Assembly (NCBI RefSeq): GCF_902652985.1
Contig: NC_047021.1
Location: forward strand, 35,526,001 to 35,590,000
Length of the DNA: 64,000 bases
Direction of reading: 5' to 3'
Source of the DNA: Pecten maximus
Taxonomy: Eukaryota
Position numbers and translations under genes: made by a program. This document shows positions 3,001 through 45,023 of this stretch, piece by piece. Position 1 is the stretch's first letter, and each line of letters starts with the position of its first letter. The notes below the pieces were generated by a model that worked only from the letters and a program-made list of their open reading frames with translations, did not search any database and was not told the origin of the DNA.

Positions 3001-4979
3001 ATGTTAATATATGTACATACATGATGTTACAGCGAATATTTCTAAAACCACAAAATGCCATGACAGCTGATATTTAGATTAAGAGACTTAAAATGTATAT
3101 TGAAATTATATGAGAAGAACTTTAGTTTTATAACTGGAGAATGTCATGCAAAAAAAAAAAAATGAATATATATATATATATTGCCCATTTAATCAGTCAA
3201 TATTAATAATTAATGAAGAGCTTGAAACATTTTTTATTTACAGCCTTGCATGATATACTGTAGGAAACTATATTTAAACCCTAACCCCAGGTTTAAATCA
3301 AACATACTTATAGATGTTAATTTGTCCCGTTTATCTAAGAGTTATGTGTCTATAATATCATGGTTTTATTCCGCAAAGAAAGTGTATCACAAATTGATTT
3401 TATTGTTTAGTCATATATTTGACTCTATTACTAAAATTAAGTTTTTTGGCTAACCAATGGAAGCTGTTGTACTTTCACTGCCTTACTGTATTAAATCATT
3501 TGTAATGAAATATATACATTATGTATATGGGTAGTTGAGACTACAAACCTTATTGTATAGACTTTATATACATTGATAGACGGTGTATTGTTTTGTTGCC
3601 ATCATGTATCGAATTTCTGTCCCCGAGGATATGGCATTATTAACATTCCAAAACAGACATTTAAACTTTACAATGACTTATTGTGAATCAATGTTTTTAT
3701 ATGGAATCACGAATTTCATTAACATTCAATGCTATATTGCTTATCTCCCTTACATATTTTGCAAGTTGTTTATAAACTAAAAATCTACTGTTCCTTAAAC
3801 CTATAATACAGAATTTTAAAGCGTTATATTAGAGTTAAGGATGTATGTTACTTTTATACATATCGAGTTAAGGATGTATGCTACATGTACCTTTTATGCA
3901 TGTCTTTTATTGAAGAGTTAAGGATGTATGCTACCATTTATAGATATCGAGTTAAGGATGTATGCTACCTTTTATACATGTCTTTTGTGTTAGTGTTAAG
4001 GATGTATGTTACCTTTATACATATCGAGTTAAGGATGTATGCTACCTTTTATACATGCCTTTTTGTGTTAAAGTTAAGTATGTATGTTACCTTTTATATA
4101 TGTCTTTTGTGTAAGAGTTAAGGATGCATGCTACCTTAAACATTATATTTCGATCTGTGTTATAGTAAATGGTATATCCTACATTATACCGGTGAATAGT
4201 GTTAGGAGTTGTCACCCTTCCAAGCATTTTGTTCCGCATGGGTTAAATACTGTGTATAAGGTGTTGAAAACTGCTGCATGTATCTAGTATATGATATTTT
4301 TTGACTAAAAAATAAGAATAAGACTTATATATATCCTAGTGTATCTTAAAAAAAAGTAAATGTAAAAATGATCATGTAACAAAATCAACAAATGTGATAG
4401 AATATAGCAGAAAACTTTCGGTGGTTTGAGAGTGTTTCTAAAGCTAAAAATTGCAAATTGATATGTTACAGCTCCCGACGCAAGACTTGCCAGAAAATAA
4501 TGAAACCCCAAATCTCAGCTCCGCAAATCGATGTGCAGTGTGCCAGAAAGATTTCGTTACAGAAGAACACAGGGTAAGCTAGTGACGTCATACTCAACAA
4601 TTGTCAATCCTTCACAGAGTTATCGTTCTTTTTTAAGCAAATCTTCTGACAATACTATGACTATATTTGTATGTATTGAATGTATCGAGTACATATTTAC
4701 GTAAAAATAATGAAAATGTACGGAGGAAACTGAACTAATCAATACCATGGATAACGCCATAAACTAAAATCAATATCAGCAAAAAATTTAATAATGAATA
4801 ATAAAAATTATTTCTATTTTTATATATTTCAGTTTTCCTGTCGGCGGTGTACAGATATTGTGTGTGGTCATTGTTACACAAAACGTATTCCATTCCAAGG
4901 GGGAGATTGCTCTATCGTGTGTGACGTATGTTATAATGAACATCTCGAGATGGAGGCGGAAATGAACGACCACATATAG
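54..4979 (+). CDS. stum/SPEC3-family membrane protein, copy 1 (5' exon outside window), with PPxY tail and C-terminal FYVE-like zinc finger. Exons 54-239, 1029-1297, 4472-4573, 4833-4979
   Basis: Exon 54-239 (tag|GG...T|gtaagt, phase 1/1, 186 nt) encodes GTIVAGMCMPCC...GFLQLLLTACFLVGWIWSAIWG, the stum/SPEC3 signature. Exon 1029-1297 ends at CAG|gtgagt. Exons 4472-4573 (cag|...AGG|gtaagc) and 4833-4979 (ttcag|...TAG) join in phase 0 to give CAVCQKDF..HRFSCRRCTDIVCGHC...IVCDVC. Confidence 0.8.
3826..4137. repeat. Degenerate minisatellite (core GAGTTAAGGATGTATGCTACC)
   Basis: About 8 imperfect tandem copies of the core in an intron of stum copy 1. Confidence 0.85.
4472..4979 (+). CDS. Two exons (4472-4573, 4833-4979) encoding a degenerate FYVE-type 8-Cys zinc finger
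   Basis: Spliced peptide CAVC-x12-CRRC-x4-CGHC-x15-CDVC has FYVE Cys spacing and the conserved Phe after the first Cys pair. Splice sites are canonical and the frame is preserved. Confidence 0.75.
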
Positions 4980-14041: not shown

Positions 14042-16822
14042 ATGGCGACATTGATGTATGTCATAGGTCTGATAGGCATCGCTACTTGTGCCAGAACTGG
14101 ATCGCATTTGCAGGAACGTTTTCTTTTCCATAATGTTTTCCCGGACCGGATTAATCCTAACTCTCTTCAGAAACTTTGGTGGATCCGGAAAATGTCTCCA
14201 GACTTATATTTGACGGGACGTCTCACGGACAGACAAGTTAAGTATGCGTCCGAGGGGGGATTCAGAACCATTATTACATTATTCCGTTTCAATTCCCCGG
14301 GACAATTGGGACTGGAGACATTCCCGACGACAGATGGGGCGAAGTTGATGGCAAATAGTCTAAACATGAATTTTCGGGCGATATTAGATTCAGAAGACGA
14401 CTGGTATAAAGTGAGTACCATTGAAAAGCTGTCCAAAGCCATTAACGAGATGGAGAAACCAATTCTTCTTCACTGCCATCGTGCACATACCATTACATTT
14501 GCTACATTGATGTATTTGGCTAACCAAACAAGATACGATCCTAGCTTTCGTCCAAAAATTACGAGTGACGTCTTTTATCAAGAAAGTGCATCTATAGGTT
14601 TAGACTTTACGGCAAATAAAACGTCAGAAGTTGTATCGAAAATCACCGGAAGTAAAGTACCGGAAGTGTTTCCGAGGACGACAGCATATCCGACAGAATG
14701 GTCGAACTATTGGCTGGTTCATTTCGTTTACAAAAATTGGTTTGTTGGAGGGCAGATCCACTCCACACATCTATCTGCTATCGTCGACACTGGCATTAAA
14801 CATATCATCAACTTACGGTTAGGAGTCTCAACACACAGTCGGGCGTCACAGGAACCTGTCACATTGCTTAACATCGTGGACGGCACGCCCACCTACGGAA
14901 ATACCACGCTTGGGCCTCGACAATCTCCGGAAACGCTGATCAGAACTAGAATTGATCTTGACAAACCGACTACTTACATATCCGAAACGTCGCCGGTGAA
15001 CTATGAAGAGAGGAACTCCCTGGAGTTTGGAGACGAAACCGGATATAATGAAGACATGGAACAAACTGCTGTGGAGAAAGCTGGATTGACCTACCATCAC
15101 CTTCCGCTGGGTAAGTGGTCGTCTTTTCCTGTAACACGAGACCAACGTCTGCTCCCCATCTCCATATTGAGGCAAGTTGGTTTATTTTAAATTATATTAT
15201 TCAATGGTAATGTTGTAATGCTTGAATGGTTTGTTTTTGTATTCTCCCAGATTCTCATAATTGACTTGTATTTTGTTCAATTTCAGTCAGAGCGTGTCCC
15301 AATGTGTTATTTTACTTTCTTTTGTACTCCAATTATAAGGTGTTATTTGTTTTCACCAAAATTACGAAAGTAGAATATGGAAAGACGCCCAGGTTAAAGC
15401 CTTTCAATGTGTTTGTTTATGAATATAAAACTTTATCAGGTTAAACTTTATGATACCCTATGGATTATCCTCATATAATTTCTACCAAATCTGCTCAGTT
15501 ATGCCAAAATTTCATAAATAAGTATAAGTATGTATAATAAACATCTAAAAATCATACGATATATATTTTGTAAATTTTATCATAAAGGTAAATTTTGAAA
15601 TTTCGTCATTGTCTTTTCTGAAAAAAATACGGTCATATGTATATTTTCATCATTGATGTTTTACGGGAGAAGACTGGAAGCAAACACGGGCGCGCCGAGC
15701 AACATTCCCAGATTATCCCAATACCGAGAAGTTTCACTGTCAATTCCGGATGGCTTTTCGCAGTTAATCTATATGTAATTGTTGTCTAGCGGACACACAT
15801 TGACCCTGTAAATGATATTTTGATTTTACCAAATCCTTTTCATTGCCTTCGTGGCAACAACCAGTGCGTCTGATTTCATCACAGGGAATCGAGAGACACG
15901 ATGGCATTTTATCGAATTTCAAAATGGCCCCCAAAACGTCTCAAAATGTGCTATACACACTAGGGAAGGTCCAAATACATGTAGACTGTAACTAATTCTC
16001 AAGTCCCTGTGACAGAATCTAATATCTGTAGTTCCAAGCAAGTCATGTCCTACCCACATACCCTGATCGCATTATAACACAGATACCATCCAACTAATGA
16101 AAGTATATCCCATTTCTTACAGACGAGAATCGGCAATACAGCAGGGAGTTGTATTCCGAATTTAAAGATAAATTTATGGAGGTCGGACAGACTGGTGAGC
16201 CAATCATCTTACACTGCTCTGACAGCAGACGTGCAGGTAAGGTATTACAAGATTTAGTTTGTACTCAGTTACACGGAAGGTTCAACACAAGGTCACAGAA
16301 ATTGTACAGATCATGGTGGAGTGTCATAATTTGTTAAGACCTTTTTGAATCTTCAAGACTTGTGTTTAGGTAGCAATGCTACGTCATTTCAGAGCCATGT
16401 TGAAATATGTCATTGGATTTCCCCTCACATAACACGCATTGTCACTTTGGATTGTATCTCCATTTATTTATTTAATAGGCTCTACCAATGAAAAATTACA
16501 TGTGCATAGGCATATCTTTAAGTTTGTTTCATATAGAATATACATGGAAAACCTCTGCACTGTAAATATTCTATTACCCGTATATGAACGCAGTTTTACA
16601 GTAACATAAGCCAAAACAGTCGTTATATGTATTTTCTTTATCCTATATATAGCCTACATGACGGTCCTCTCTGCAGCACTCCAGGAGGGTCAGCATTTAC
16701 AATGGGCTTTGGCCAAACTTGACGAGATAGGGTTTCCAATAGGACCGCTGGTCAAACCGGACGTATACAGTATGTATGTCGCGTGGTTGACCGATTCCAT
16801 CAGCAATGAGACTGGCCGCTGA
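14042..16822 (+). CDS. Predicted secreted tandem DUF442/TIGR01244-like (PTP-fold sulfurtransferase/phosphatase-like) protein, copy A (450 aa). Exons 14042-15110, 16123-16236, 16653-16822
   Basis: Hydrophobic N-terminal signal-like peptide. Two repeats of the pattern (G[RQ]...G[FI]xx[IV]IxL...xGxxYxxxP...P[IV][IL]LHC); second active loop HCSDSRR (CX4R). Phase-1 introns with canonical sites, and exon 2 is 114 nt as in copy B. Confidence 0.88.
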
Positions 16823-32426: not shown

Positions 32427-35400
32427 TCACAGTTCGTCTTTGGTTGAGTTGAATTTCTTGGTGTCTAACCAGGCTGCGTACATAAGATACACGTCCTTAT
32501 GTTCGGTGGGACTAACAACAAACCCGAGCTCGCGCGTCCGCTGTAGGGCCCAGTTAAGGTCCTTGTTGTACTGTAGGGCGGCGGCCAGCACCGTCATGTA
32601 GGCTGTGGATTGTAACAGAACAAGGCAATGTAAAAATGGTTAAATTGTATCAGAAAAAAAACAACGTTTTATCCAACAAAGGAGAAAACAACTTTGTTGA
32701 CACAATTTTGATTTTATTTTCCAAAGTATGATAGTATCAAAGTAAGAAGTAGAAGAAGAAGTCAAGTTTATCTGTTTATAAAGATGGCACCATTTTAGAT
32801 ACTCAAGTTAAATATTACTCTAGATATCATGGCATAATCGCTCTAATTTTCTTCACGATGTGAAAGAAACCGGATGGACAGCATTTCTGTTTTACATACC
32901 GGAAATGACGTCAACTACATTCCGGCCTACAAACAGGTTTCTTGTGGTACTGATTGATTTATTTCCGAAAACTTGCCATGGTAGCCGACTTTAAAATTCT
33001 AACCAGTCGCCTCTTTGTGGCCTGTGATAATGGTCTGATGTTCTGGTCAGTTTTCTGGTCAGTTTAAGCGGAATACTGTATATACTTACCCACTCTGTGG
33101 GCGCTAGCACAGTGAACTAGGACAGGCTCTCCCGTTCTCCCGATCTCCAGTAACTTATCCTTGTATTTCCCGAATAACTCCGGACTAAACTTTCCACTGG
33201 ACACTGCAAATACATGGAAATTAGTAAAATTATATCCACAGGAAACCGAACATATTTGACTCAAAGATTAGTAATATTTATGACACTTTTGTATTTCACT
33301 CATGAAAGACTGTTCCGGCGTTTTTTCATTAAGAGTTTGTTCCCCTTGGAAATATTTAGTACTCCCCCATCCCAACATTACCTTAGTTATAAGCTTTGCG
33401 TTCATACCAGTAACGTAATACCCCCACAGTGACTTTTCTCTGTAGTAAGATGATTAGATCATAGATGCTCGACTTCTTTTAATAATACATATAAGTCATC
33501 CATAAAGGCATTTAATCAAAAATGTTGTGTCGTCGTTGAAAAAAAATATGTGAGAATCCAACTTTAAGATATATAAGTATCACGATTATGTGGACAATTT
33601 CTAAGTGCAGTCAGGGACCTCTCTATTTAAACGGTGTACAATGTACCTGAGTTTACTCATTTTCGCTTTAAAAAGTTTTAATCGCAACCTAGCATGAGCG
33701 GTATTTCATGGTAGGTAGGTGTACATGTACGTGTGTCTTATCAGTAACTACCGAGGTTAATTTTTAAAGGAGAACTTTCAATATTATTACGCTGTGCGTT
33801 TTATGTTTGATAATGTTTAGGGTGATATTTACAGTTAATTATTAAACGAAACTATGCAAATGTTTGAATGTGTGTTTAAAAAAAAAAAATACAAATGTAA
33901 TAACATTTGTTAGACACACCTTTGGTTTTCGTATGACGTCATTAAAATACCTGTATGCAAGCTACATAACTATACACAATGAATATGCATTTGATCTTAA
34001 TGCACTTAAAAATAAATTTTATTTATTTAACAACATTTGTGAAGCAAGTTATATCAACTTATATCCATCACGCTTGTTGGCCATATTTGAAGCGCGCGAG
34101 GGGTCTTACTGTGGGAGGAAATCGGGAGTACCTGGGGAAAACCCACGTGGTCAGGCAGGTGACCCCAATATCTTTTCACGCCCGATCGCGAGAACCAACC
34201 CCGGCCGCATATTGTATAATCCTTATATACCAAATATTATCGCTGTTATATAAACCTGTTATTATACTATACATTGGTCAATTACACTGTCTTACATATA
34301 TATACATTGAATATCAATATCAACACCACCATATGAACTGGATATAATCATTATTATGTGAAACACTTTTTTTCACAAATATACATGTATGTACTGGATA
34401 TTATCATCAAATCGGATAACACCACTGTTGTAATCTAAAATATATGATATAATTATATTTTAGCACAAATCAACGTGCGGGAGGGTAAATATGGCACTAT
34501 TGCTTCTTTGTTTAAAATCATACTATGGTTAATTAATTAATATTCAGCCTTATATCACAACGGTTTTTCTGGTCGTTGTAATATTTTTGTAGAATAGATA
34601 TAAAATCCAAAGATGTTGAAGTATGGTCCAAGATATCGTATTTATTAAACTAAACTTTCTAGGAGTCAGGCGGGTGATTTACGGAATATCCGAAAATTGA
34701 CCCGTGCAGTCCGCACTCTAGGTTTTAATTAATTTTACAAAACGTTACACATGGTATTAAGCTGGAGTTAATGCAATAATTGACAGGTGGCATTTTGTCA
34801 CATTTCAGACTGGCGAGATACCCGCGGCTAGGTGTCATACCTGGCCAGACCAGTTAAGTAACTCAATTAACATCAAAAGATAAAAGTACATACATATTAC
34901 GTGGTTTAATCCGATAACAATGAGAAAAAAGGAATTATGCATATCACTTTCAAAAGACATATTGCTTGTTGAGATGTAATCAAATGATTTTTAAATAAAA
35001 CATTGAACAAAGCGAAATAAGACGGCGAATAAATTCAAAATTATGAAAAATGTAAAATGTCCAATAAATGTTCCTATTATCACTTATTTCATAAAATTAA
35101 CTTTGGAACTTAGATCAATAAAAAAGAAAAGAAAAAAAAAAAAAAAAACATTGATGAATACATCAAATAATATAGCAAACGATAAACCTTGTATTGAAGG
35201 TTCACATTATGAATGTATTGCGTCATTAAGCATTAAACTCGTAGACATCACAGTCAGTGTATTCTCGCTGACCTGTCTCCAAGGATACACACGTGCATGT
35301 GTAAAACATGTTTTACTTACGGACTGGCATGTGATAATAATGGAAACCCGCCTTTTCCAGAACCTGTCTTTCTCGATCTTCATTATAGCCTATCTCGTCT

Positions 35401-36404
35401 CCGAACTCTCCCGGATTTCTCGACTCGAAGTTCACGGCCGAATTCTTGGACACAAAGGTCTTGTTTTTTGTTGGGTCAAGGACAAGTTTCGTTAAAGTTT
35501 CCGGGATTTGTCGCGGACCTGTCTCTTTGCTGCCGTACGTCGGTGTGCCGTCTTTGACGTTGATGAGAGTTACCTGCTCTTGGGAAGGATTTCCGTTTTC
35601 GTCCTGAACACCCATTCTCATGTTGATCACGTGGATAAAGCCGGCCATTTGTAAAGTTTGAAGATGACTTTCGCTTATTTGTCCAGCTGTGAACCAGTTT
35701 TTATAGACAGGGTGGGCCATCCAGTAATCATACCACTCATCTGGCACAGAGTTTGGTTCCGGTAAATTCTCTGGAATTGCTTCTCCAGTAACTTCCGCTG
35801 CAGTCATTTGCGTAAAGTCCATAGCAAAATCTAAACCCATGGCGGCAGCCATCTTGTATACTTTTTCGAAACTGACTTGAGGTATGTAATTTTGGTCGTG
35901 TTTTGAAGCGTTGGCTAAATACATCATAGTCACAAACGTTATCGTGTATGCCCGGTTACAATGAAGTAAAACAGGCCTTTTCAAGGTAGGAATAATGGCA
36001 GACATTTTATTTACAGCTTCGATCGATGCCCAATCGCAGTTGTCTGTCTCTAATACAACCCGATACTCGAGTCCTGCTTGCTTGGCGATTTCAGCAGCTT
36101 CGGCACTCGTAGGAATGTATTCATCACCGATACTGGATGGCTCATCATCTTGGAAAAGCGACACAATGCTTTTAAATCCTCCGTCTGCTGCATATTTAAT
36201 TTGTCGTTCGGATAACCTGCCAGCGACATGGAAATCTGGCGTTATTTCCTTGGCCCACCATAGTTTTTTAGGGGCTCGAAGTCCCGGGGCACTTCTCTGT
36301 AGAAATGTGTCAACATAGACGCTATTTGAATGTTGTACATCGGCTCGCACTGACGTAACGCATAATTGAAATGTCAACAAAATCAGTGTTAATATTCGAT
36401 ACAT
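32427..36404 (-). CDS. Predicted ER-luminal (signal peptide + KDEL) tandem DUF442/TIGR01244-like protein, copy B (457 aa). Exons 36404-35321, 33203-33090, 32602-32427
   Basis: Signal peptide MYRILTLILLTFQLCVTSVRA. Donor C|gtaagt. Exon 2 (114 nt) encodes GEPVLVHCASAHRV (CX4R). Exon 3 reads AYMTVLAAALQ...FNSTKDEL*. Exon structure is identical to copy A. Confidence 0.92.
34050..34210 (-). mobile_element. V-SINE remnant
   Basis: Minus strand GTGGGTTTTCCCCAGGTACTCCCGATTTCCTCCCAC matches the conserved V-domain core, preceded by a degenerate B-box-like stretch. Confidence 0.75.
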
Positions 36405-36467
36405 GTCTCAGATCACTCAAAACTGTACCTTTATCCGAATGCTAGATACCCGAGTAATCCCGAATGG

Positions 36468-36505
36468 TGACGTGGCTATATATATCTGACTTCCTGTGCA
36501 CGTGG
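36468..36505 (-). promoter_or_regulatory. Putative core promoter of copy B: TATA box with adjacent TGACGTGG (UPRE-like) and CCACGTG motifs
   Basis: TATATATA at 36477-36485, about 75 bp upstream of the ATG. TGACGTGG at 36468-36475 and CACGTGG at 36499-36505. Confidence 0.45.
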
Positions 36506-36773
36506 AAACACCGAAGCTGATATAACTTTCTTCATTCATATATACACATTCACACACAAATTAAAATCGATTATTGTTACATCATCTCGTAGCAGACTTG
36601 TTATGTTTCATTTTAACAGAAAATCAGCACTATCTACAGGGTTACGACGTTACCAGTTTCAATGGCTTGTCCTTTACGATATCCGTGTATACTGCACAGC
36701 TGCGCTTCTCACGCAAATCCATCACGTATACAGCTATGTGTGTGTGTGTGGCGTGTGTTAGGTGGCATGTTGT

Positions 36774-37953
36774 AAATTTCGGACTCGTCACGATCCATTT
36801 TTATTCTGGTATCTTTGGACATAAGCTGTAATTGATTGCCTACCCTGGTGCTTCCAGCCGAGAAAGAACCTAACAACAATTGTCACCAACATAAATTATA
36901 GACAATATGAATTAATACACATTTGCAATTATAGATTTCTTATGAATCACAATTATTACCGAATTATCACAGTAAAACTATTCGCGATTATATGATCATC
37001 GGGTTTGTGAATGGTTCTTTATGACGTGTTATTTCAACACCCTTTTAACCATGCAAGCTATAGCCAAGTGACGTCGACATTACCATAAACCAATATCAAA
37101 TTTCGGACTCGTCACGATCCATTTTTATTCTGGTATCTTTGGACATGTTGAAAATTAGTCTTTAATAATTCGATCTCCCGTAACGCATCGACATCTTCTG
37201 TTATTGGTGGAGATTCATTTTTCGTTCCGGTGTTTTAATACAGTCAGACTTGGTTTATATCAATACGATCTCGTGACATAACACTTAAAAATATTAGTCG
37301 ATGTTAGTCTAGACATTCCAATGTGTTTGATCTGTTTATAATGATTTAATCCGTCAATCGTATTAAATGGAATAGCCACGATGACTTTGCACTAACGATC
37401 AAATCCACGGTCCAATATATATACACACGTTCAGACTGTTGGGTCCGATATTTCTCCCGGTGATATGTATTCTATCTTTACTTACTATCGCAGTCCCTTA
37501 GCCACTTACTCCGTGACACATAAGTCATGTCCTTAGCGATGTTTTGAACAGCTTCTGCGGCTGTGCCACGCCAGCTGACCCAGTTAAAGGTTTTATTACT
37601 ATATTTTTTGTGGCCTATGATACAGAGGCTGAGATACACTATGTACAACGTACATGTATGTATATATTCTACATAAGCTGTAATTGATTGCCTGCCCTGG
37701 TGCTTCCAGCCTGACGAAAGAACCTAACAACAATTGTCACCAACATAAATTATAGACAATATAAATTAATACATATTTGCAATTATAGATTTCTTATGAA
37801 TCACAATTATTACCGAATTATCACAGTAAACTTTTCGCGATTCATATGCTCATTGCGTTTGTGAATGGTTCTCTATGACGTGTTATTTCAGCACCCTTTT
37901 AACCAAGCTAGCAAGCTATAGCCAATTGACATTACCATACACCAATATCAAAT
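36774..37953. repeat. Local tandem duplication with internal deletion (A-B | A'-X-B')
   Basis: 36774-36822 matches 37098-37146, and 36819-37101 closely matches 37671-37953. The first copy lacks X (about 525 bp), with ACAT microhomology at the junction. Confidence 0.88.
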
Positions 37954-38829
37954 CATTTTAAAAGTCAATCATGATTTATTTCTGATATTGGTCACTGTCA
38001 AGTTTATTCATTAATTTGGGTCGTTTTGATAACTCTTTGAAACAACAATTTACCGTCAGGACGAATTAAAGGCGTACGATTCATAGCAAAAAGGTTGAAA
38101 AATATAACTACATTTACACCCAAGGAAACTTAAGACGTCGTTGAAAGATTTAAGCATTGTAACACATATGACATTAAATTTGAGTCAAACTAACACACTA
38201 TAACGCGGTTGAAAGTCCTTATAAAATATTACCCTTTGCACATGTATTTTTTTCTTTTCTTAAAAAGAAATTTCGGGCAAAAAGTGCATCTAAACCAACA
38301 TTTAGGTTTAGCATTCTGACTTCTGACCCACGCCCCCATGTTCATCAAAGGGTTCTCCCTGAACTGAGCTTTATAATAAAATTCAAATAAGATATGCATA
38401 TTCAAATAAAGTACATGTATGCCATACTTGAAATACAGAATTAATTAATGAGTACAATTTTGTCTTCATTTTTTGAACATAACCAAACCTTTTTGTCGGT
38501 TCAGGTGTGGTCCAGTTTACAGAGGTTAGATAAGTCGTAGTTACCCCCTGGTAACTTTTATATGATAAATTAAAATTTGAGGTTAAAGAGAGGCAAAATA
38601 CAACACTAAATCTCATACGACGCGAAGATTCGGGCTCAGATAAATGAAATATGAGCAGACCGCATTTTGTAAAAATATATATGATGTATTCTGATACAAT
38701 TAGAACTCTATCATTTCTCAGCACACATTTAGCAATAAAATCATGGCTTGTTAGAATTGTTGATATGTAAACATTTTTATATTTTACGACTAACCACAAA
38801 CCGTGGCAATAAAATTGACTAGACGTGAC

Positions 38830-38980
38830 AGGGTCGACTCTAAAACCATGACAGTAGTGTTTACTTGATTGGCTAAGTCCAATCTAAAACCACGGCATCA
38901 GAGTTTACTTGACTTGACTAAGACCAATCTGAAACCATGACAGTAGAGTTTACTTGGCTTTACTAAGACCAATCTGAAAT
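38830..38980. repeat. About 46-bp tandem repeat x3
   Basis: Recurrent CTAAGACCAATCTGAAACCATGACAGTAGAGTTTACTT motif. Confidence 0.75.
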
Positions 38981-41559
38981 CTTAAGAACGGAGTTGGCTA
39001 GACTTTTGAACCCATGAAAACCCATTTGGGGAGCCCGACTGGTCCTTGCTTTACATTTGCCAACACTCTATCTATACCTACATATGTTCTACAAAGATAA
39101 GACGATTTATAGCACTATGTGAAATAATGGACTAGAAATACATATGGGAAACAAGGAGCTGGAGACAAATGTGACCATTTAAGGGGGTTTTCTATGACAG
39201 ATCAAGACACATTGACCAGACATTTCTTTTCCTTACATTAGTACATTAGAAATGCATGTCTTATATTGTGACAATGATACAAGGCTACTACATATTTGTT
39301 GGAAATGTAAGGTTTCGTAAAAACATATTTGTATGAAAATATAGAATGACTTCTGTTTATGCAATACAGACGTATGTAACCACTTCTTCGTTTGTAACAG
39401 TTATGGAGATCAGAAAGTAAAATAGCACCGTAAACTGAAGCATTTAATACTACAAATCCTGCAGATGTTACTACATAAATGTGAAGATTTATTTCTAGAA
39501 GACCAGTGGATTAAAAACTTTTGCCTTTCTTCCAAATACAGAAAATAAGAAAATGAATATCAATATTATATACAAATATTGTTACTTTTGTTGTATCTAA
39601 TGTTACTCTTTGTCTTTCTCCACTCTGTTTGTGTCCCTCTCTCCGTCTCTCTAATATACATGTAACACCCTATAAAAATGTATATTGTAAAATGCTATTG
39701 AAAAAGGGCTTGATATCAGATGGAAAACCCTATTCCCGAGTATATAAAACATGAGGTAAGGTTTAAGTGTTGTCTAAACAAGCCATGGCCGAAATTTCCC
39801 CAAATCATGTCAGGATAAATTGATGTGAAAATCTCTGCAGAGGTTTTGGGGATTAGAAAATATCAACATGATAGAGAAACTAGAACAAACAAAAAACAAA
39901 CAATAAAAACCCCAGAAAATACTCAAATTAAACTGAAAAAGTAAGTAGACTGGAAAACCAACAGAGATATATTAACGAAACCTTAATTTGAAATAATAAT
40001 CGATAAAACGAGGAGAAATCAACAAAGAGTAGCGACATTATAACGAATAACGAAATCTTAATTTAACTAATAATCGATAAGACCAGAGAAAAAATATACG
40101 AAAAAAGGTTTGCATGGATGACCTTGAATGTATTAAAGGGTAAGCGTCTTCTGCTTCGATGACGTCACCCACAGTACAAATCTAGGCCAAATCTTGGTTA
40201 AGTCACGTTCAACGAATCAACCAGGCATATCGACGAGCTTCAGTCACGTTCAACGGTACCACAAGGCATATCAACGAGCACCAGTCACGTTTGTCAAAGT
40301 CAAATGGTATATGGGAGCAAACAATTTTTCCAATATATACATGTATATATGAGGACTGTTCTATATATGTACGTACGCTACAACAAGAAAACGTGCACTC
40401 TGGACAACAATACTGGTATAAGTATATCTAAAACTACCCGACGTGAAAGTTTATCGATGCTGGACATTCTAAATGGGCATCAGGCGAAAAGATAGAATTG
40501 ATGTTTGTTGGTTAAGGATAAGAAGGAATTCGTATAGACTGATAGTCAACTAAATATTTCTGACATTGAGACTGGATTTATTTTTTTAAGATACTGAAGT
40601 AAATATGTTTCTAAGATGCAAGGAAAATAAATAAAAAACTTAAACAGAAATAGAAACATGTTCCTTTTTTATGATATATATATATATATATTTACAACGA
40701 ATCTGAAAACATGCTTACGGTACATCTCTGAATTGAGAGAATTCCTTTAAGACAGAAAACTGTTTTACAGAGAAAAATATTATATTGCTTGTTTTATTAC
40801 TAACATCACTTAATAAACAACATATATCTAGCCATGAAATCATAACGAGACGATACTATTAAACTGTTCCAATATAGTAGTTAAGCTAGAATTAACAGAG
40901 ATGCAAACCTATTTGGATCAAGCCAATATTTAATTATTTCCAATCCTTCGCTGTAATTTTAATATTTCGTATTAGAAGGAATGAGAAATGATCAATTTAA
41001 ATCTAACTACTCTAACCTCAGCACTAACACTGAAAGTTTACCGAAATTATTACTACAAGGTTATATAGAGGACATTCTAAATATAAAAATCTAAATGTTA
41101 TCAGCGACACATCACAGTATTTACGACTTTTATTTAAACTCCTCGATAACTCGTGGTGACGTTGGAATTGTATCTGCAGTACAAACCTGCCCTCTCATGC
41201 ACAATACAGTGCAGGTCATTCACCGAACTACGCGGCTATGTGCACACATCGTCGGGTCTAGTGCATTTTATAGAACGTTAAAAGCGACGTGCGGAATGTC
41301 ACGTGCATTTTGAGTTCATAATGCTTCATACATGTATGTGTATATACTGTTTATCACAAAATGATATAGAATGACACATGATATGCAAATATGTCTAATT
41401 TACACCAACAAATGAAAGAAGCAATAACAACGTCCTAAATACTATAGAACTTATTCAGGACGCAGTTGATTAATTATTGACAACAATTTTGAAAAATGTA
41501 AAGAAAGTTCAAACTTTTGGAAGGATTGTAGTAGTGTTACATATGTGGTGGAATGGTAA

Positions 41560-42190
41560 ATTATATAACGTTTAGAAAGGGTAGTAGTAGTGTAAAGTAT
41601 GTTACGGTTTGAAGGTGGTAGTAGTGTAAAGTACATGTATGTTGCTTTTGGAGGGTGGCAGTAGTGTAAAGAATGCAGCGTTTGAAAAGGTGGTGCTAGT
41701 GTAAAGTATGTAAATTTAGAAAGGTGGTAGAAGTGTAAAGTATGTAAAGTTTGGAAGGATGGTAATAGTGTAAAGTATAACTTTTGGAGGATGGTAATAG
41801 TGTAAAGTATGTAACTTTTGGAGGATGGTAATAGTGTAAAGTATGTAACTTTTGGTGGGTGGTAATAGTGTAAAGTATGTAAAGTTTGGAAGGATGGTAA
41901 TAGTGTAAAGTATAACTTTTGGTGGGTGGTAATAGTGTAAAGTATGTAAAGTTTGGAAGGATGGTAATAGTGTAAAGTATAACTTTTGGTGGGTGGTAAT
42001 AGTGTAAAGTATGTAAAGTTTGGAAGGATGGTAATAGTGTAAAGTATAACTTTTGGTGGGTGGTAGTAGTGTAAAGTATGTAAAGTTTGGAAGGATGGTA
42101 ATAGTGTAAAGTATAACTTTTGGTGGGTGGTAGAAGTGTAAAGTATGTAACGTTTGGAAGGTGATAGTAGTGTCAAGTACGTAACTTTTT
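41560..42190. repeat. Minisatellite of alternating 35/33-bp units (68-bp higher-order repeat)
   Basis: GGTAATAGTGTAAAGTATGTAAAGTTTGGAAGGAT alternates with GGTAATAGTGTAAAGTATAACTTTTGGTGGGT. Confidence 0.95.
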
Positions 42191-43362
42191 GTATGATATG
42201 TATATATACAAACTATTCTTATTTTCAATCGATCACAATTACTCTATGTTGGAGAATCACAGTTTATTACCACTATTTTTTCCCCTTGTAGTTAAGTATA
42301 TTTTACTTGATTAAAACATGGTATGTATAATTAAGCTATTGAAATTCCTGCCACCTACCGATATTGAAATATCAACTATTTATTTATATGCATGTGCATA
42401 TGAGTAAACAGAACAATTGTAAAATAATATTTATTTGGCCTATCAATGTCACTTGTCAATCACCTGCTATTGTTGTATTATTGACACAGTAACGACGAAA
42501 ACTATCTACATAAGCTGTTAGTGATGTCTGTTGACGAAGACCATCTGGATTATAATATTATTCATTGACTGCACAAATGACACGCAAATTTATACCAATA
42601 TCTTTGATACTCAATTTAATCTTTTATAGATGCGCAATAATGAATATTAGATTACAAAATAGAACTTCCATCACGACATTCCGTATTTATATATTTACAA
42701 AAAAGTCACTGTGTTGTGTCCAGCTGTTTTGATCATTTTGTTTCGCGATAGAACATTTTTATATAGGTAATGCTGTAGTTGTATTTTAGCTGGTTTACCT
42801 TTATAAAGGTGAACCCAATTGTGTAACATATCACAGCGGTGTCAAAACATTTACACGTGCACAAACAAGATGATCATAAGACCTTTCTTAACAATAATAC
42901 GTTTCCCATATATCTACATATATAAAACCAAAATATATATTATTGATATTATTGTTTATGTTCAGAGTTATATGTAACAAATACACTGTATTTGTTCTAT
43001 ACACAAATGCAACAGAGCGAATGGTGACATACATGCAAATATATAGTGATATTTTCAAATGATTTGTCGTTCGGAATTATTCTTTCAAAAATGTAAATAC
43101 GTATTCAAATATACTGCAAAGCTGTGATACGAAGATAAAATTTTATATTTCGTTGTATAAGCAGCAAACTAACTCATAAAATGAGGATGTGATTTAAGTT
43201 TTTTGCATTTTGCAGACATTTTCTCCGGCTGCTTTTGGATATAGCTTCATTGGTGATTCAATTTAACAAAGGTTTAGTTAGAATCGAATAGCTTGCTAGA
43301 TAACTGTAGTGTATGCAATGTTCTGTTCATTACTCGAACACATCTTTGGTAGATATACTTAC

Positions 43363-44449
43363 GGACTGGCATATGGTAATACTGGAACCCTGCTTCTTCC
43401 AGAACCTGTCTTTCCCGGTCTTCGTTATAACCAATCTCGTCTCCGAACTCACCGGAGTTTCTCGCTTCGAAGTTTACGCCCGAATCTTCGGCGATGAAAG
43501 AGTTTTCTCTTCCCGAGTCGAGAACGATTCCTTTAAGGGTGTCCGGGATTTGTCTCGGACCTGTCTCTTTGCTGCCGTACGTCGGTGTGCCGTCTTTGAC
43601 GTTGATGAGAGTTACTTGCTCTTGTGAAGGATTTCCGTTTTCGTCATCGACACCCATTCTCATATTGATCACATGGATGAAGCCATCCATTTTTAACTTT
43701 TCCAAATGACTTTCGCGTATTTGTCCGGCTGTATACCAGTTCTTATAGACAGGGTGCGCCATCCAATAATCGTACCACACTTTTGGTACCACGTTTGGCG
43801 ACGGTACATTTTCCGGGATGACTTCGCCGGTTATTTCTGCAGCAGTCTTCCGCGTAAAGTCCATAGTAAAATCTATGCCCATGACAGAGGCCATCTTATA
43901 AAATTTCTGTATATCCATTCGCGGTGAGTAATTTGGGTCTTGTTTTGAAGCATTAGCCATGTGCATCATTGTTACAAAGGATATCGTATAGGCTCGGTGA
44001 CAATGAAGTAGAACTGGTTTTTCTAAAGTCGGCATGATCGCAGATAATTTGTCCACGGCTTGAACTGAAGCCCAATCTGAATTTCCAGATTCCAGAACAA
44101 CCCGATGCTGAAGTCCAGCGTGTTTAGCAATTTTTGCAGCCTCGTCGCTCGTTGGGAGATACTCATCGCCGATGTTTGATGGCTCATCGTAATGGTACAA
44201 AGAGACAATGCTTTTGAATCCCCCGTCTGCTGCGTATTTGATCTGACGTTCGGATAACCGTCCAGCGACGTGAAAGTCGGGTGTCAATTCTTTGGCCCAC
44301 CATAGCTTCTTTGGAGCCCGTAATCCTGGAGCACCTCTCTGTACTAAGGTATCCACATATGTACGGCTTGGCTGTTGCACGTTGGCAGCTCGTAAAGGTG
44401 AGACGAATAGTCTTAAAGAAACCAAACGTAATGCCAAAGCCAGTGTCAT
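43363..44449 (-). CDS. Tandem DUF442-like protein, copy C: intact first coding exon (1087 nt, phase 1), probably spliced to copy B exons 2-3
   Basis: Colinear with copy B exon 1, same donor (ATGCCAGTCC|gtaagt), many synonymous differences and no stops. No exon 2/3 homologs were seen between 36.4 and 43.3 kb. Confidence 0.88.
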
Positions 44450-44560
44450 GATTACAACCTGGTTTTGGAAACTTAGCTGTGTATACAGAATACAGCCAAA
44501 TTCTGGGTCGTTAATGACCCCGGATGTCTAACTCTGCCTCTGCGCACACACATACAGTTC

Positions 44561-44574
44561 TATATATGACGTCA
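44561..44574 (-). promoter_or_regulatory. Putative TATA box with abutting CRE (TGACGTCA) upstream of copy C
   Basis: TATATA at 44561-44566, about 112 bp upstream of the ATG, and the TGACGTCA palindrome at 44567-44574. Confidence 0.4.
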
Positions 44575-45023
44575 GTGCCTGAAAGGCATATGCTAAAGTG
44601 TGGTCTAAATAAAGACTTTTTGGTTTTGTTTTTAAACAATACATTATTCGAACATACTTACACACTACTTCACAATACACTTACATCTATGAGTTGGTTG
44701 TAAAACAACCTATAAGCTTATATCAATTTCTCTCCTAATATTTTGTGTCTTTTTGACAACAAAAGAAGTAAGAAGTATTGATATCACCTAAAATGTATGT
44801 TAACTTTTGTATTTGAAGTTGAAAGAATTTTTTATTCAGATAAACGTAAGTTTTTTTTCAGTATTACCTCAACCATTAAACGTTTTGAGAAGAAAATATG
44901 GGACTGCCTAGTGTATAAATCTAATGTGAAGTTTCGTTTCAAAACCCTGTTATGTATTATTTTCATACATAAGCATTCCGTCGCGTGATATTTAATATAG
45001 CGGAATTTTGAATATTGCTCGCA

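What the first reader, a model, noticed from the sequence alone, without database searches (positions are those of the whole stretch)
32427..44449. Variable-first-exon / constant-exon gene: two 1.1-kb alternative first exons appear to share one catalytic-loop exon and one KDEL exon
Seen: copy C (44449-43363) and copy B (36404-35321) are intact paralogous first exons. Each has its own TATA and ATG and the identical phase-1 donor ATGCCAGTCC|gtaagt, yet only one exon 2 (33203-33090) and one exon 3 (32602-32427) lie downstream. C differs from B at many third codon positions while the protein is conserved (for example across DFHVAGRLSERQIKYAADGGFKSIVSL), so it is not a decaying fragment. Unspliced C would lack the second domain's catalytic HCASAHR loop. 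Inference: promoter choice selects a variable N-terminal 1.5 domains joined to a constant catalytic/KDEL C-terminus, as in vertebrate UGT1A or clustered protocadherins, but in an uncharacterised enzyme family.
Basis: partly seen in the sequence, partly recalled or inferred. Interest (0 to 1): 0.85.

Follow-up and report, generated by a model that had tools for sequence, protein, structure and literature searches.

The report
Scallop gene with two alternative first exons
A great-scallop gene for an uncharacterised ER enzyme has two interchangeable 1.1-kb first exons spliced to the same two last exons; this is real and conserved across scallops, but it is a known kind of gene layout and NCBI already annotates it as two isoforms.

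Summary
The window is Pecten maximus. On the minus strand, first exon C (44449-43363) and first exon B (36404-35321) are both open. Both end on the same phase-1 donor. Only one exon 2 (33203-33090) and one KDEL exon 3 (32602-32427) exist, in the window and in the whole assembly.

NCBI already lists LOC117330705 isoform X1 (C + exons 2/3, 458 aa) and X2 (B + exons 2/3, 457 aa). RNA contigs from four studies cover exon C and stop exactly at its donor. One contig continues with 20 letters that are the start of exon 2, so the 43363->33203 junction was seen.

Argopecten, Ylistrum and Mizuhopecten have the same two-plus-two layout; Pinctada has a single first exon. In the trees, C-type and B-type exons form separate clades inside one scallop clade. 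dN/dS is 0.04-0.12.

The protein has two tandem cysteine-phosphatase-fold (DUF442) domains, a hydrophobic N-terminus and KDEL. Differences fixed between the two exon types cluster around the active-site loops of domain 1.

The closest analogues are vertebrate GCNT2 and UGT2A. Verdict: a new member of a known kind, of modest interest. The scan's other note on this window (KDEL exon; paralogue A lacks KDEL) agrees.

The parts
44561..44566 (-). TATA-like box upstream of first exon C
   Evidence: Read directly from the sequence. The farthest upstream RNA contig end is at 44532, about 30 nt downstream. Promoter function is inferred.
43363..44532 (-). Variable first exon C. The 5' UTR runs from about 44532, the ATG is at 44449 and the phase-1 donor follows 43363. 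It encodes the signal-like N-terminus, DUF442 domain 1 and the first two thirds of domain 2 (isoform X1).
   Evidence: Open frame. 100% match to RefSeq isoform X1, P0001. RNA contigs in 4 runs from 4 studies cover 44532-43363 and stop at the donor.
33204..43362 (-). Intron removed from C-initiated transcripts (10.2 kb). It contains first exon B and its promoter.
   Evidence: The junction contig shows 20 loose letters at 43363 that equal window 33203-33184. Depth in 42200-43362 is zero in the three cleaner RNA runs.
41556..42189 (.). 67-bp (34+33) tandem repeat inside the C intron. It is not an exon of this gene.
   Evidence: TRF. RNA contigs that lie on it run on into unrelated sequence at both sides (table 7), so they come from other copies.
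36476..36485 (-). TATA-like box upstream of first exon B
   Evidence: Read directly from the sequence. Function is inferred.
35321..36404 (-). Variable first exon B (coding part). It is the paralogue of C and has the same phase-1 donor (isoform X2).
   Evidence: Open frame. Identical to RefSeq isoform X2, P0005. B-specific sequence (window 35470 onwards) appears as loose ends of RNA contigs in runs X1, X3 and X4.
33090..33203 (-). Constant exon 2. It encodes a helix, a strand and the Cys-X4-Arg loop (HCASAHR) of domain 2.
   Evidence: It is the only copy at this locus. C394 and R399 are invariant in 42 homologues.
32427..32602 (-). Constant exon 3 (coding part). It encodes the C-terminal helices of domain 2 and KDEL followed by the stop.
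   Evidence: The C-termini of X1 and X2 are identical.
43542..43650 (-). Tract of about 100 nt in exon C that is nearly identical to exon B (98% identity; 95% at third codon positions). It is probably a short gene-conversion tract on top of strong constraint.
   Evidence: Sliding-window comparison. B-type RNA contigs lie on C here and leave it at 43542.

Best explanation
This is one Pecten maximus gene, LOC117330705, with two mutually exclusive coding first exons. Each first exon has its own upstream region with a TATA box, its own ATG and signal-like N-terminus, and the same phase-1 donor. A transcript started at C uses the C donor and removes 10.2 kb, including exon B, to reach the single exon-2 acceptor. 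A transcript started at B uses the B donor and the same acceptor. The products share the last 96 residues (the domain-2 Cys-X4-Arg loop, C-terminal helices and KDEL). They differ in the first 361-362 residues (all of domain 1 and the N-terminal part of domain 2). The first exon was duplicated in the scallop lineage after it split from pearl oysters and before the four sampled scallop genera diverged. Both copies have been kept by purifying selection since then. The protein is a likely ER-luminal tandem DUF442 (cysteine-phosphatase-fold) enzyme. The two isoforms probably differ mainly in the substrate pocket of domain 1. Shown: the exon layout, the C->exon 2 junction, the presence of both first exons in RNA contigs, the conservation, the selection and the fold. 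Inferred: promoter choice, strict mutual exclusivity, ER location, enzymatic activity and the functional difference between isoforms.
For: Layout and frames.

Annotation: RefSeq isoforms X1 and X2 are identical to the two spliced models.

RNA evidence: exon C is held by 20 runs from 7 studies, 4 of them recorded as RNA-Seq. Contigs of runs X1, X3, X4 and X11 end exactly at 43363, and the intron beside it is silent in three of them. The X1 contig (223 letters of exon C with no mismatch, depth 86) goes on with 20 letters that are the reverse complement of window 33184-33203, the start of exon 2. Twenty letters is what a k=31 unitig should show, because B and C share their last 10 nt.

No spare exons: there is no other exon 2/3 in the window or the genome.

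Conservation: the same layout, with a Spec3 gene next door, occurs in Argopecten, Ylistrum and Mizuhopecten. All 8 first exons are open and share the same donor. Pinctada has the same 3-exon gene with one first exon.

Trees: the C clade has support 99/99 and the B clade 89-92, inside a scallop clade at 97-100.

Selection: dN/dS is 0.04-0.12 between orthologues.

Family and fold: Pfam PF04273 scores 32.9 bits against a cut-off of 26.1. The AF2 model has pLDDT 89. Foldseek hits include the tandem PTP-like phytase, Cdc14 and the DUF442 structures 3gxh and 2f46.

Isoform differences: 11 differences are fixed between the C and B types, 8 in domain 1 and 1 in the domain-2 part. Five of them lie in the three loops at the C-terminal ends of the domain-1 strands, including the residue next to Cys150.
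Against: Only one of the four laid runs shows the 20 letters across the junction, and that run's RNA status is a guess; it also has depth 2-4 in the intron. Contigs cannot show transcript starts, full-length molecules or relative levels, so separate promoters and strict mutual exclusion are not shown. The active-site loops were defined after seeing the model, and no 3D distances could be computed, so the clustering P values (0.0004 and 0.0015) are indicative only.
Confidence: 0.92

Rival explanations
1. C is a truncated duplicate, a dead-end gene fragment. Its transcripts are non-productive, and the X1 isoform is an annotation or read-through artefact.
For: No private exon 2/3 lies downstream of C. 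The direct junction evidence is one contig in one run.
Against: Exon C is intact in four genera, with dN/dS 0.04-0.08 among C orthologues and saturated dS. The phase-1 donor is conserved in all four. RNA coverage stops exactly at the donor in four studies, and the intron is silent. The junction to exon 2 keeps the frame through to KDEL.
Confidence: 0.04
2. Assembly collapse: C really has its own exons 2/3, and they were lost from the Pecten maximus assembly.
For: None positive. It could not be checked with long reads here.
Against: Four independent assemblies of four genera show the same layout of two first exons with one exon 2 and one exon 3. X1 and X2 have identical C-termini in each species. 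The observed junction letters match the single exon 2 exactly. There are no N runs in the window.
Confidence: 0.01
3. The architecture is real but the two isoforms are functionally redundant. The duplication would then be kept for expression control (two promoters, tissue or stage specific) rather than for different enzyme specificity.
For: The upstream regions and signal-peptide codons share no detectable similarity. Overall protein identity is 74%, and both catalytic cysteines are kept.
Against: Type-specific residues have been fixed since before the four genera diverged, and they sit in the domain-1 active-site loops: H151 vs N151 beside Cys150, G122/S124 vs D122/C124, and Y85/Y87 vs F85/D87. 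Both first exons appear in the same RNA libraries. This rival is compatible with the main explanation and differs only in why both copies are kept.
Confidence: 0.3

Closest known systems
Vertebrate GCNT2 (IGnT) cluster: three similar variable first exons, each with its own promoter, spliced to two constant exons (PMC1885805)
   Same: A large first exon encodes most of a luminal enzyme. There are two short constant exons. The variable exons are tandem paralogues. The exon boundary lies inside the catalytic domain. The layout is conserved across a clade.
   Different: The enzyme family is unrelated (a glycosyltransferase, against a DUF442 cysteine-phosphatase fold). GCNT2 has three variable exons and this gene has two. 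GCNT2 is a membrane-anchored Golgi protein, whereas this one looks like a soluble KDEL protein. GCNT2 is from vertebrates and this gene from molluscs.
Vertebrate UGT2A1/2 and UGT1A clusters (PMC1885805)
   Same: Each variable first exon encodes a signal peptide plus an N-terminal substrate-recognition part, and the constant exons encode a shared C-terminal part of an ER enzyme. UGT2A has exactly two variable exons with 64% nt identity, against 78% here.
   Different: UGT1A has about a dozen variable exons that turn over by birth and death. Here there is a stable pair with no turnover in the four genera. In the UGTs the boundary lies between domains. Here the constant exons complete domain 2 and carry its catalytic loop.
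Clustered protocadherins (alpha and gamma)
   Same: A variable first exon is spliced to shared constant exons. Short gene-conversion tracts between variable exons are described for the Pcdh clusters (PMC1885805) and are suspected here.
   Different: The protocadherin clusters have dozens of exons with stochastic promoter choice that gives neurons an identity. Nothing comparable in number or logic is seen here.
DUF442 / BLH_phosphatase proteins (Pfam PF04273): the Xylella Blh N-terminal domain and the structures 3gxh and 2f46
   Same: They share the fold and the Cys-X4-Arg loop.
   Different: The bacterial proteins have a single domain or are fused to a persulfide dioxygenase. The Blh domain acts as a sulfurtransferase (PMC5823870). 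The mollusc protein is a tandem of two such domains with a signal-like N-terminus and KDEL, and its activity is unknown.

Membership tests
Multiple-variable-first-exon gene (GCNT2 / UGT / Pcdh type) | Two or more tandem, paralogous first exons, each with its own start codon | tested here: met
   C and B are 74% identical in protein, and both are open from ATG to the donor.
Multiple-variable-first-exon gene (GCNT2 / UGT / Pcdh type) | One shared set of downstream constant exons, with no private copies | tested here: met
   tblastn of the window at E<=10 and a six-frame search of the whole assembly. The same holds in three other genera.
Multiple-variable-first-exon gene (GCNT2 / UGT / Pcdh type) | The donor of each variable exon is joined in RNA to the same constant acceptor | tested here: met
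   The C->exon 2 junction was seen in a run X1 contig.
Multiple-variable-first-exon gene (GCNT2 / UGT / Pcdh type) | [quoted passage not shown] | tested here: inconclusive
   There are separate TATA-like boxes, and the C contigs end about 30 nt downstream of the C box. Contigs cannot show transcription starts, and no CAGE or raw reads were available.
Multiple-variable-first-exon gene (GCNT2 / UGT / Pcdh type) | Variable exons are mutually exclusive (a downstream variable exon is never included as an internal exon) | tested here: inconclusive
   The only loose end at the C donor is exon 2, and no annotated isoform contains both first exons. Full-length molecules were not seen.
Pfam PF04273 BLH_phosphatase (DUF442) | Profile score above the curated cut-off | tested here: met
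   P0001 scores 32.9 bits against a cut-off of 26.1, in two stretches. Exon B alone scores 26.6 and exon C alone 21.4.
Pfam PF04273 BLH_phosphatase (DUF442) | Cysteine-phosphatase fold with a conserved Cys-X4-Arg loop | tested here: met
   Foldseek against 3gxh gives E 9e-6 and TM(target) 0.67, and against 2f46 TM 0.75. C394 and R399 are invariant. H149, C150, R152, Y154 and T155 are nearly invariant in domain 1, which lacks the Arg at +5.
Pfam PF04273 BLH_phosphatase (DUF442) | Phosphatase or sulfurtransferase activity | not testable with these tools
   This needs enzyme assays. The only biochemical precedent read here is the sulfurtransferase activity of the Blh domain (PMC5823870).

The most novel reading that the evidence does not exclude
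The pair of first exons is an anciently fixed specificity switch. One ER-luminal tandem DUF442 enzyme would be made in two versions whose domain-1 pockets differ (H151/G122/S124/Y85/Y87 against N151/D122/C124/F85/D87), while both use the same domain-2 catalytic loop. The family may also be prone to this solution. Aplysia californica seems to carry an independent, much more divergent upstream N-terminal module that ends on the same phase-1 donor and is annotated as sharing the constant exons.
Probability: 0.3. Interest if true: 0.45.

Novelty: new member of a known kind. Interest (0 to 1): 0.3.

Why it matters
The finding adds a clean, conserved invertebrate example of the variable-first-exon / constant-exon layout, which is best known from vertebrate UGT, GCNT2 and protocadherin genes. 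It occurs in an enzyme family (animal tandem DUF442 proteins with KDEL) whose function is unstudied. The two natural isoforms form a ready-made experiment. They differ at a handful of residues that have stayed fixed across scallops, placed around one active site, and this could help find the substrate of the family. It does not change any general picture, and both isoforms are already in RefSeq.

Tried and rejected
- **Private exons for C:** tblastn with word size 2 at E<=10 over 36.4-43.3 kb, blastn between the B unit and the C unit and a whole-genome six-frame search all found none. RNA contigs on 38601-43362 lie only on the 67-bp satellite at 41.6-42.2 kb. They run into unrelated sequence on both sides, so they come from other copies and are not exons of this gene.
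- **Retrocopy as the source of the junction contig:** rejected, because the assembly holds no further copy of exon C.
- **PDB by sequence profile:** only weak hits (TpbA and poxvirus/DUSP phosphatases, E about 5e-4) to the domain-2 loop region. The fold search was more informative.
- **Literature:** no paper mentions LOC117330705. The papers listed for DUF442 deal with bacterial proteins.
- **Placing the Aplysia upstream module in the tree:** it is a very long branch (about 1.9-2.3), so its origin is unresolved.
- **How searches were made:** joined exon models were translated and compared with the window only inside local scripts. All searches of shared databases used single-exon references or the database's own proteins (P0001 and others).
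Full report
**What is there**

Exon C matches an NCBI protein named for Pecten maximus at 100% identity. On the minus strand lie two long open first exons, C (ATG 44449, last base 43363) and B (ATG 36404, last base 35321). Each ends on ATGCCAGTCC|gtaagt in phase 1. Downstream there is a single exon 2 (33203-33090, acceptor tttgcag|) and a single exon 3 (32602-32427, ending KDEL-stop).

Joining either first exon to exons 2 and 3 gives an uninterrupted frame of 458 aa (C) or 457 aa (B) (local script). DNA similarity between the two units is confined to 35314-36317 and 43356-44359 (78% identity). It excludes the upstream regions, the signal-peptide codons and all but 7 nt of the intron.

There is no second exon 2 or 3 between the two first exons (tblastn, E<=10). 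There is none elsewhere in the 918-Mb assembly either. The assembly holds only first exons A, B and C and two exon-2/3 sets, and the second set belongs to paralogue A at 14.2-16.8 kb on the plus strand.

**Is exon C really spliced to the shared exons?**

Three independent lines say yes.

- **Annotation.** NCBI RefSeq holds 'uncharacterized protein LOC117330705 isoform X1' (P0001) and 'isoform X2' (P0005). They equal my C-spliced and B-spliced translations residue for residue.
- **RNA.** Exon C is held by 20 public runs from 7 studies, four of them recorded as RNA-Seq. I laid contigs of four runs from four studies on 38601-44600. In all four, contigs cover exon C from about 44499-44532 down to exactly 43363. 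The adjoining intron (42200-43362) has zero depth in X3, X4 and X11, and depth 1-4 in X1.
  - One X1 contig matches 43363-43585 without a mismatch (depth 86). It continues with 20 letters whose reverse complement is the first 20 bases of exon 2, and this string occurs only once in the window, at 33184-33203.
  - Twenty is the expected overhang for k=31 unitigs. B and C share their last 10 bases, so the C-specific path must merge with the B path after 10+20 letters.
  - The assembly holds no retrocopy that could mimic this junction.
  - Contigs that lie on the near-identical tract of C and then leave it at 43542 continue as exon B sequence (window 35470 onwards). Both first exons are therefore present in the same RNA-derived contig sets.
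- **Conservation.** See the next section.

**Conservation and age**

Argopecten irradians (L001), Ylistrum balloti (L002) and Mizuhopecten yessoensis (L003) each have two annotated products that start at different first exons and end at the same coordinate. A Spec3 gene follows in each. tblastn shows two first exons, one exon 2 and one exon 3 in each species. In each species with both proteins retrieved, X1 and X2 have identical C-termini.

All eight first exons are open and end on the same phase-1 GTAAGT donor. Pinctada has the same three-exon gene with a single first exon and nothing similar within 10 kb upstream.

In maximum-likelihood trees the scallop first exons form one clade (support 97-100). 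It splits into a C clade (99/99) and a B clade (89-92). The exon was therefore duplicated in the scallop stem, before these four genera diverged.

Synonymous sites are saturated between orthologues (dS about 1 or more), while dN/dS is 0.04-0.12. For B against C within Pecten it is 0.096. Both copies have been kept under purifying selection.

Local exceptions suggest short gene-conversion tracts. These are codons 281-300 in Pecten (98% nt identity, 95% at third positions), and several tracts plus a lower overall dS (0.68) in Mizuhopecten. That region is also unusually conserved between species.

The assembly-collapse rival is excluded for practical purposes, because four independent assemblies agree.

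**What the protein is**

P0001 passes the Pfam threshold for PF04273 (BLH_phosphatase, formerly DUF442) with two matched stretches. An AlphaFold2 model built on 42 homologues is confident (mean pLDDT 89, pTM 0.87). It shows two alpha/beta domains.

Foldseek finds the tandemly repeated PTP-like phytase of Mitsuokella, Cdc14 (also a tandem of two phosphatase-like domains) and the single-domain DUF442 structures 3gxh and 2f46.

Across molluscs, C394 and R399 (HCASxR, encoded by exon 2) are invariant. In domain 1, H149, C150, R152, Y154 and T155 are nearly invariant.

The N-terminus is hydrophobic and the C-terminus is KDEL. A soluble ER-luminal location is the natural inference, but it is untested.

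The chemistry is open. The fold is that of cysteine phosphatases, but the one DUF442 domain whose biochemistry I read, in Xylella Blh, is a sulfurtransferase (PMC5823870).

**How the variable and constant parts divide the protein**

Exon 1 encodes the signal-like peptide, all of domain 1 and the sheet core plus a long insertion of domain 2. Exon 2 adds a helix, the last strand and the catalytic loop of domain 2. Exon 3 adds the closing helices and KDEL.

The domain-2 part of exon 1 has to pack against the shared exons. It is more alike between B and C (78-86% protein identity) than domain 1 is (69-75%).

Eleven positions are fixed for one residue in all four C exons and for another in all four B exons: L35F, Y85F, Y87D, H115Y, G122D, S124C, H151N, H163Y, P172Q, V224E and D255A. 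Eight are in domain 1.

Five of them lie in the three loops that follow strands 80-85, 114-119 and 146-150. In this fold those loops surround the catalytic cysteine. One of the five is the residue next to Cys150, and two are in the loop where dual-specificity phosphatases carry their general acid (hypergeometric P 0.0004; the loops were defined after the fact).

My reading, as an inference, is that the isoforms differ chiefly in the domain-1 pocket.

**Comparison with known systems**

The layout is the 'multiple variable first exons plus constant exons' type reviewed in PMC1885805. The nearest parallels are GCNT2 (three similar variable exons, each with its own promoter, and two constant exons) and UGT2A (two variable exons with 64% nt identity). 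UGT1A and the protocadherin clusters are much larger arrays.

That paper notes that thousands of human genes have alternative first exons, but that only a few of them have similar first exons. This case is therefore uncommon but not new in kind. No paper mentions the gene, although NCBI's pipeline already models both isoforms in four species.

**Limits**

- The B->exon 2 junction, tissue use and transcript starts were therefore not examined.
- All laid data were contigs, which cannot show starts, levels or whole molecules.
- The run that shows the junction is RNA only by guess.
- Joined exon models were used only in local scripts. Database searches used single exons by reference or the database's own proteins.

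**Verdict**

[quoted passage not shown] Interest is modest (0.3).

Noticed in passing
L001:20065-23564 (Argopecten irradians, intron 2 of the orthologue): A 3.5-kb tandem array of about 55 copies of a 63-bp unit. The unit is the 3' end of exon 2, including the catalytic-loop codons (EPVLVHCASATRV) and the gtaagt donor. The unit length is a multiple of three, so the array offers dozens of in-frame duplicate donors. Pecten has no such array; it shows only a 12-bp x2 repeat at 33041-33065. It could be a real minisatellite or an assembly artefact.
   Followed up: partly
L005:2-616 and 3098-3358 (Aplysia californica): About 7 kb upstream of the Aplysia orthologue's first exon lies a second, very divergent N-terminal module (38-41% identity). 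It is split by an extra intron and ends ...NLPL on a phase-1 gt donor. No exon 2/3 lies between it and the downstream first exon. NCBI lists a 541-aa product that starts upstream and ends at the same gene end. This may be an independent case of the same architecture. Its place in the tree is unresolved because of a long branch.
   Followed up: partly
window 41556-42189: A 67-bp (34+33) tandem repeat sits in the C intron. In RNA contig sets its words reach depths up to about 540, far above the gene itself. The contigs continue into unrelated sequence, so a dispersed or satellite family with the same unit is transcribed, or is abundant, elsewhere.
   Followed up: no
window 14168-16816, + strand: Paralogue A of the same family is about 44% identical to B and C. 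It has its own exon 2 (about 16104-16301) and exon 3 (16649 onwards). It ends ...SNETGR-stop and has no KDEL, so it is probably not retained in the ER. It is a long branch in the trees.
   Followed up: partly
window 36774-36900 vs 37098-37146 and 37671-37754: Short direct repeats (49-84 bp, 96-100% identical) lie in the region upstream of exon B. They suggest recent local duplication in the B upstream region.
   Followed up: no
window 43542-43650 vs about 35500-35605; also L003: There are signs of gene conversion between the two first exons: one tract of about 100 nt in Pecten, and several tracts plus a lower overall dS (0.68) in Mizuhopecten. The same codons are also unusually conserved at synonymous sites between species, which hints at nucleotide-level constraint.
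   Followed up: partly
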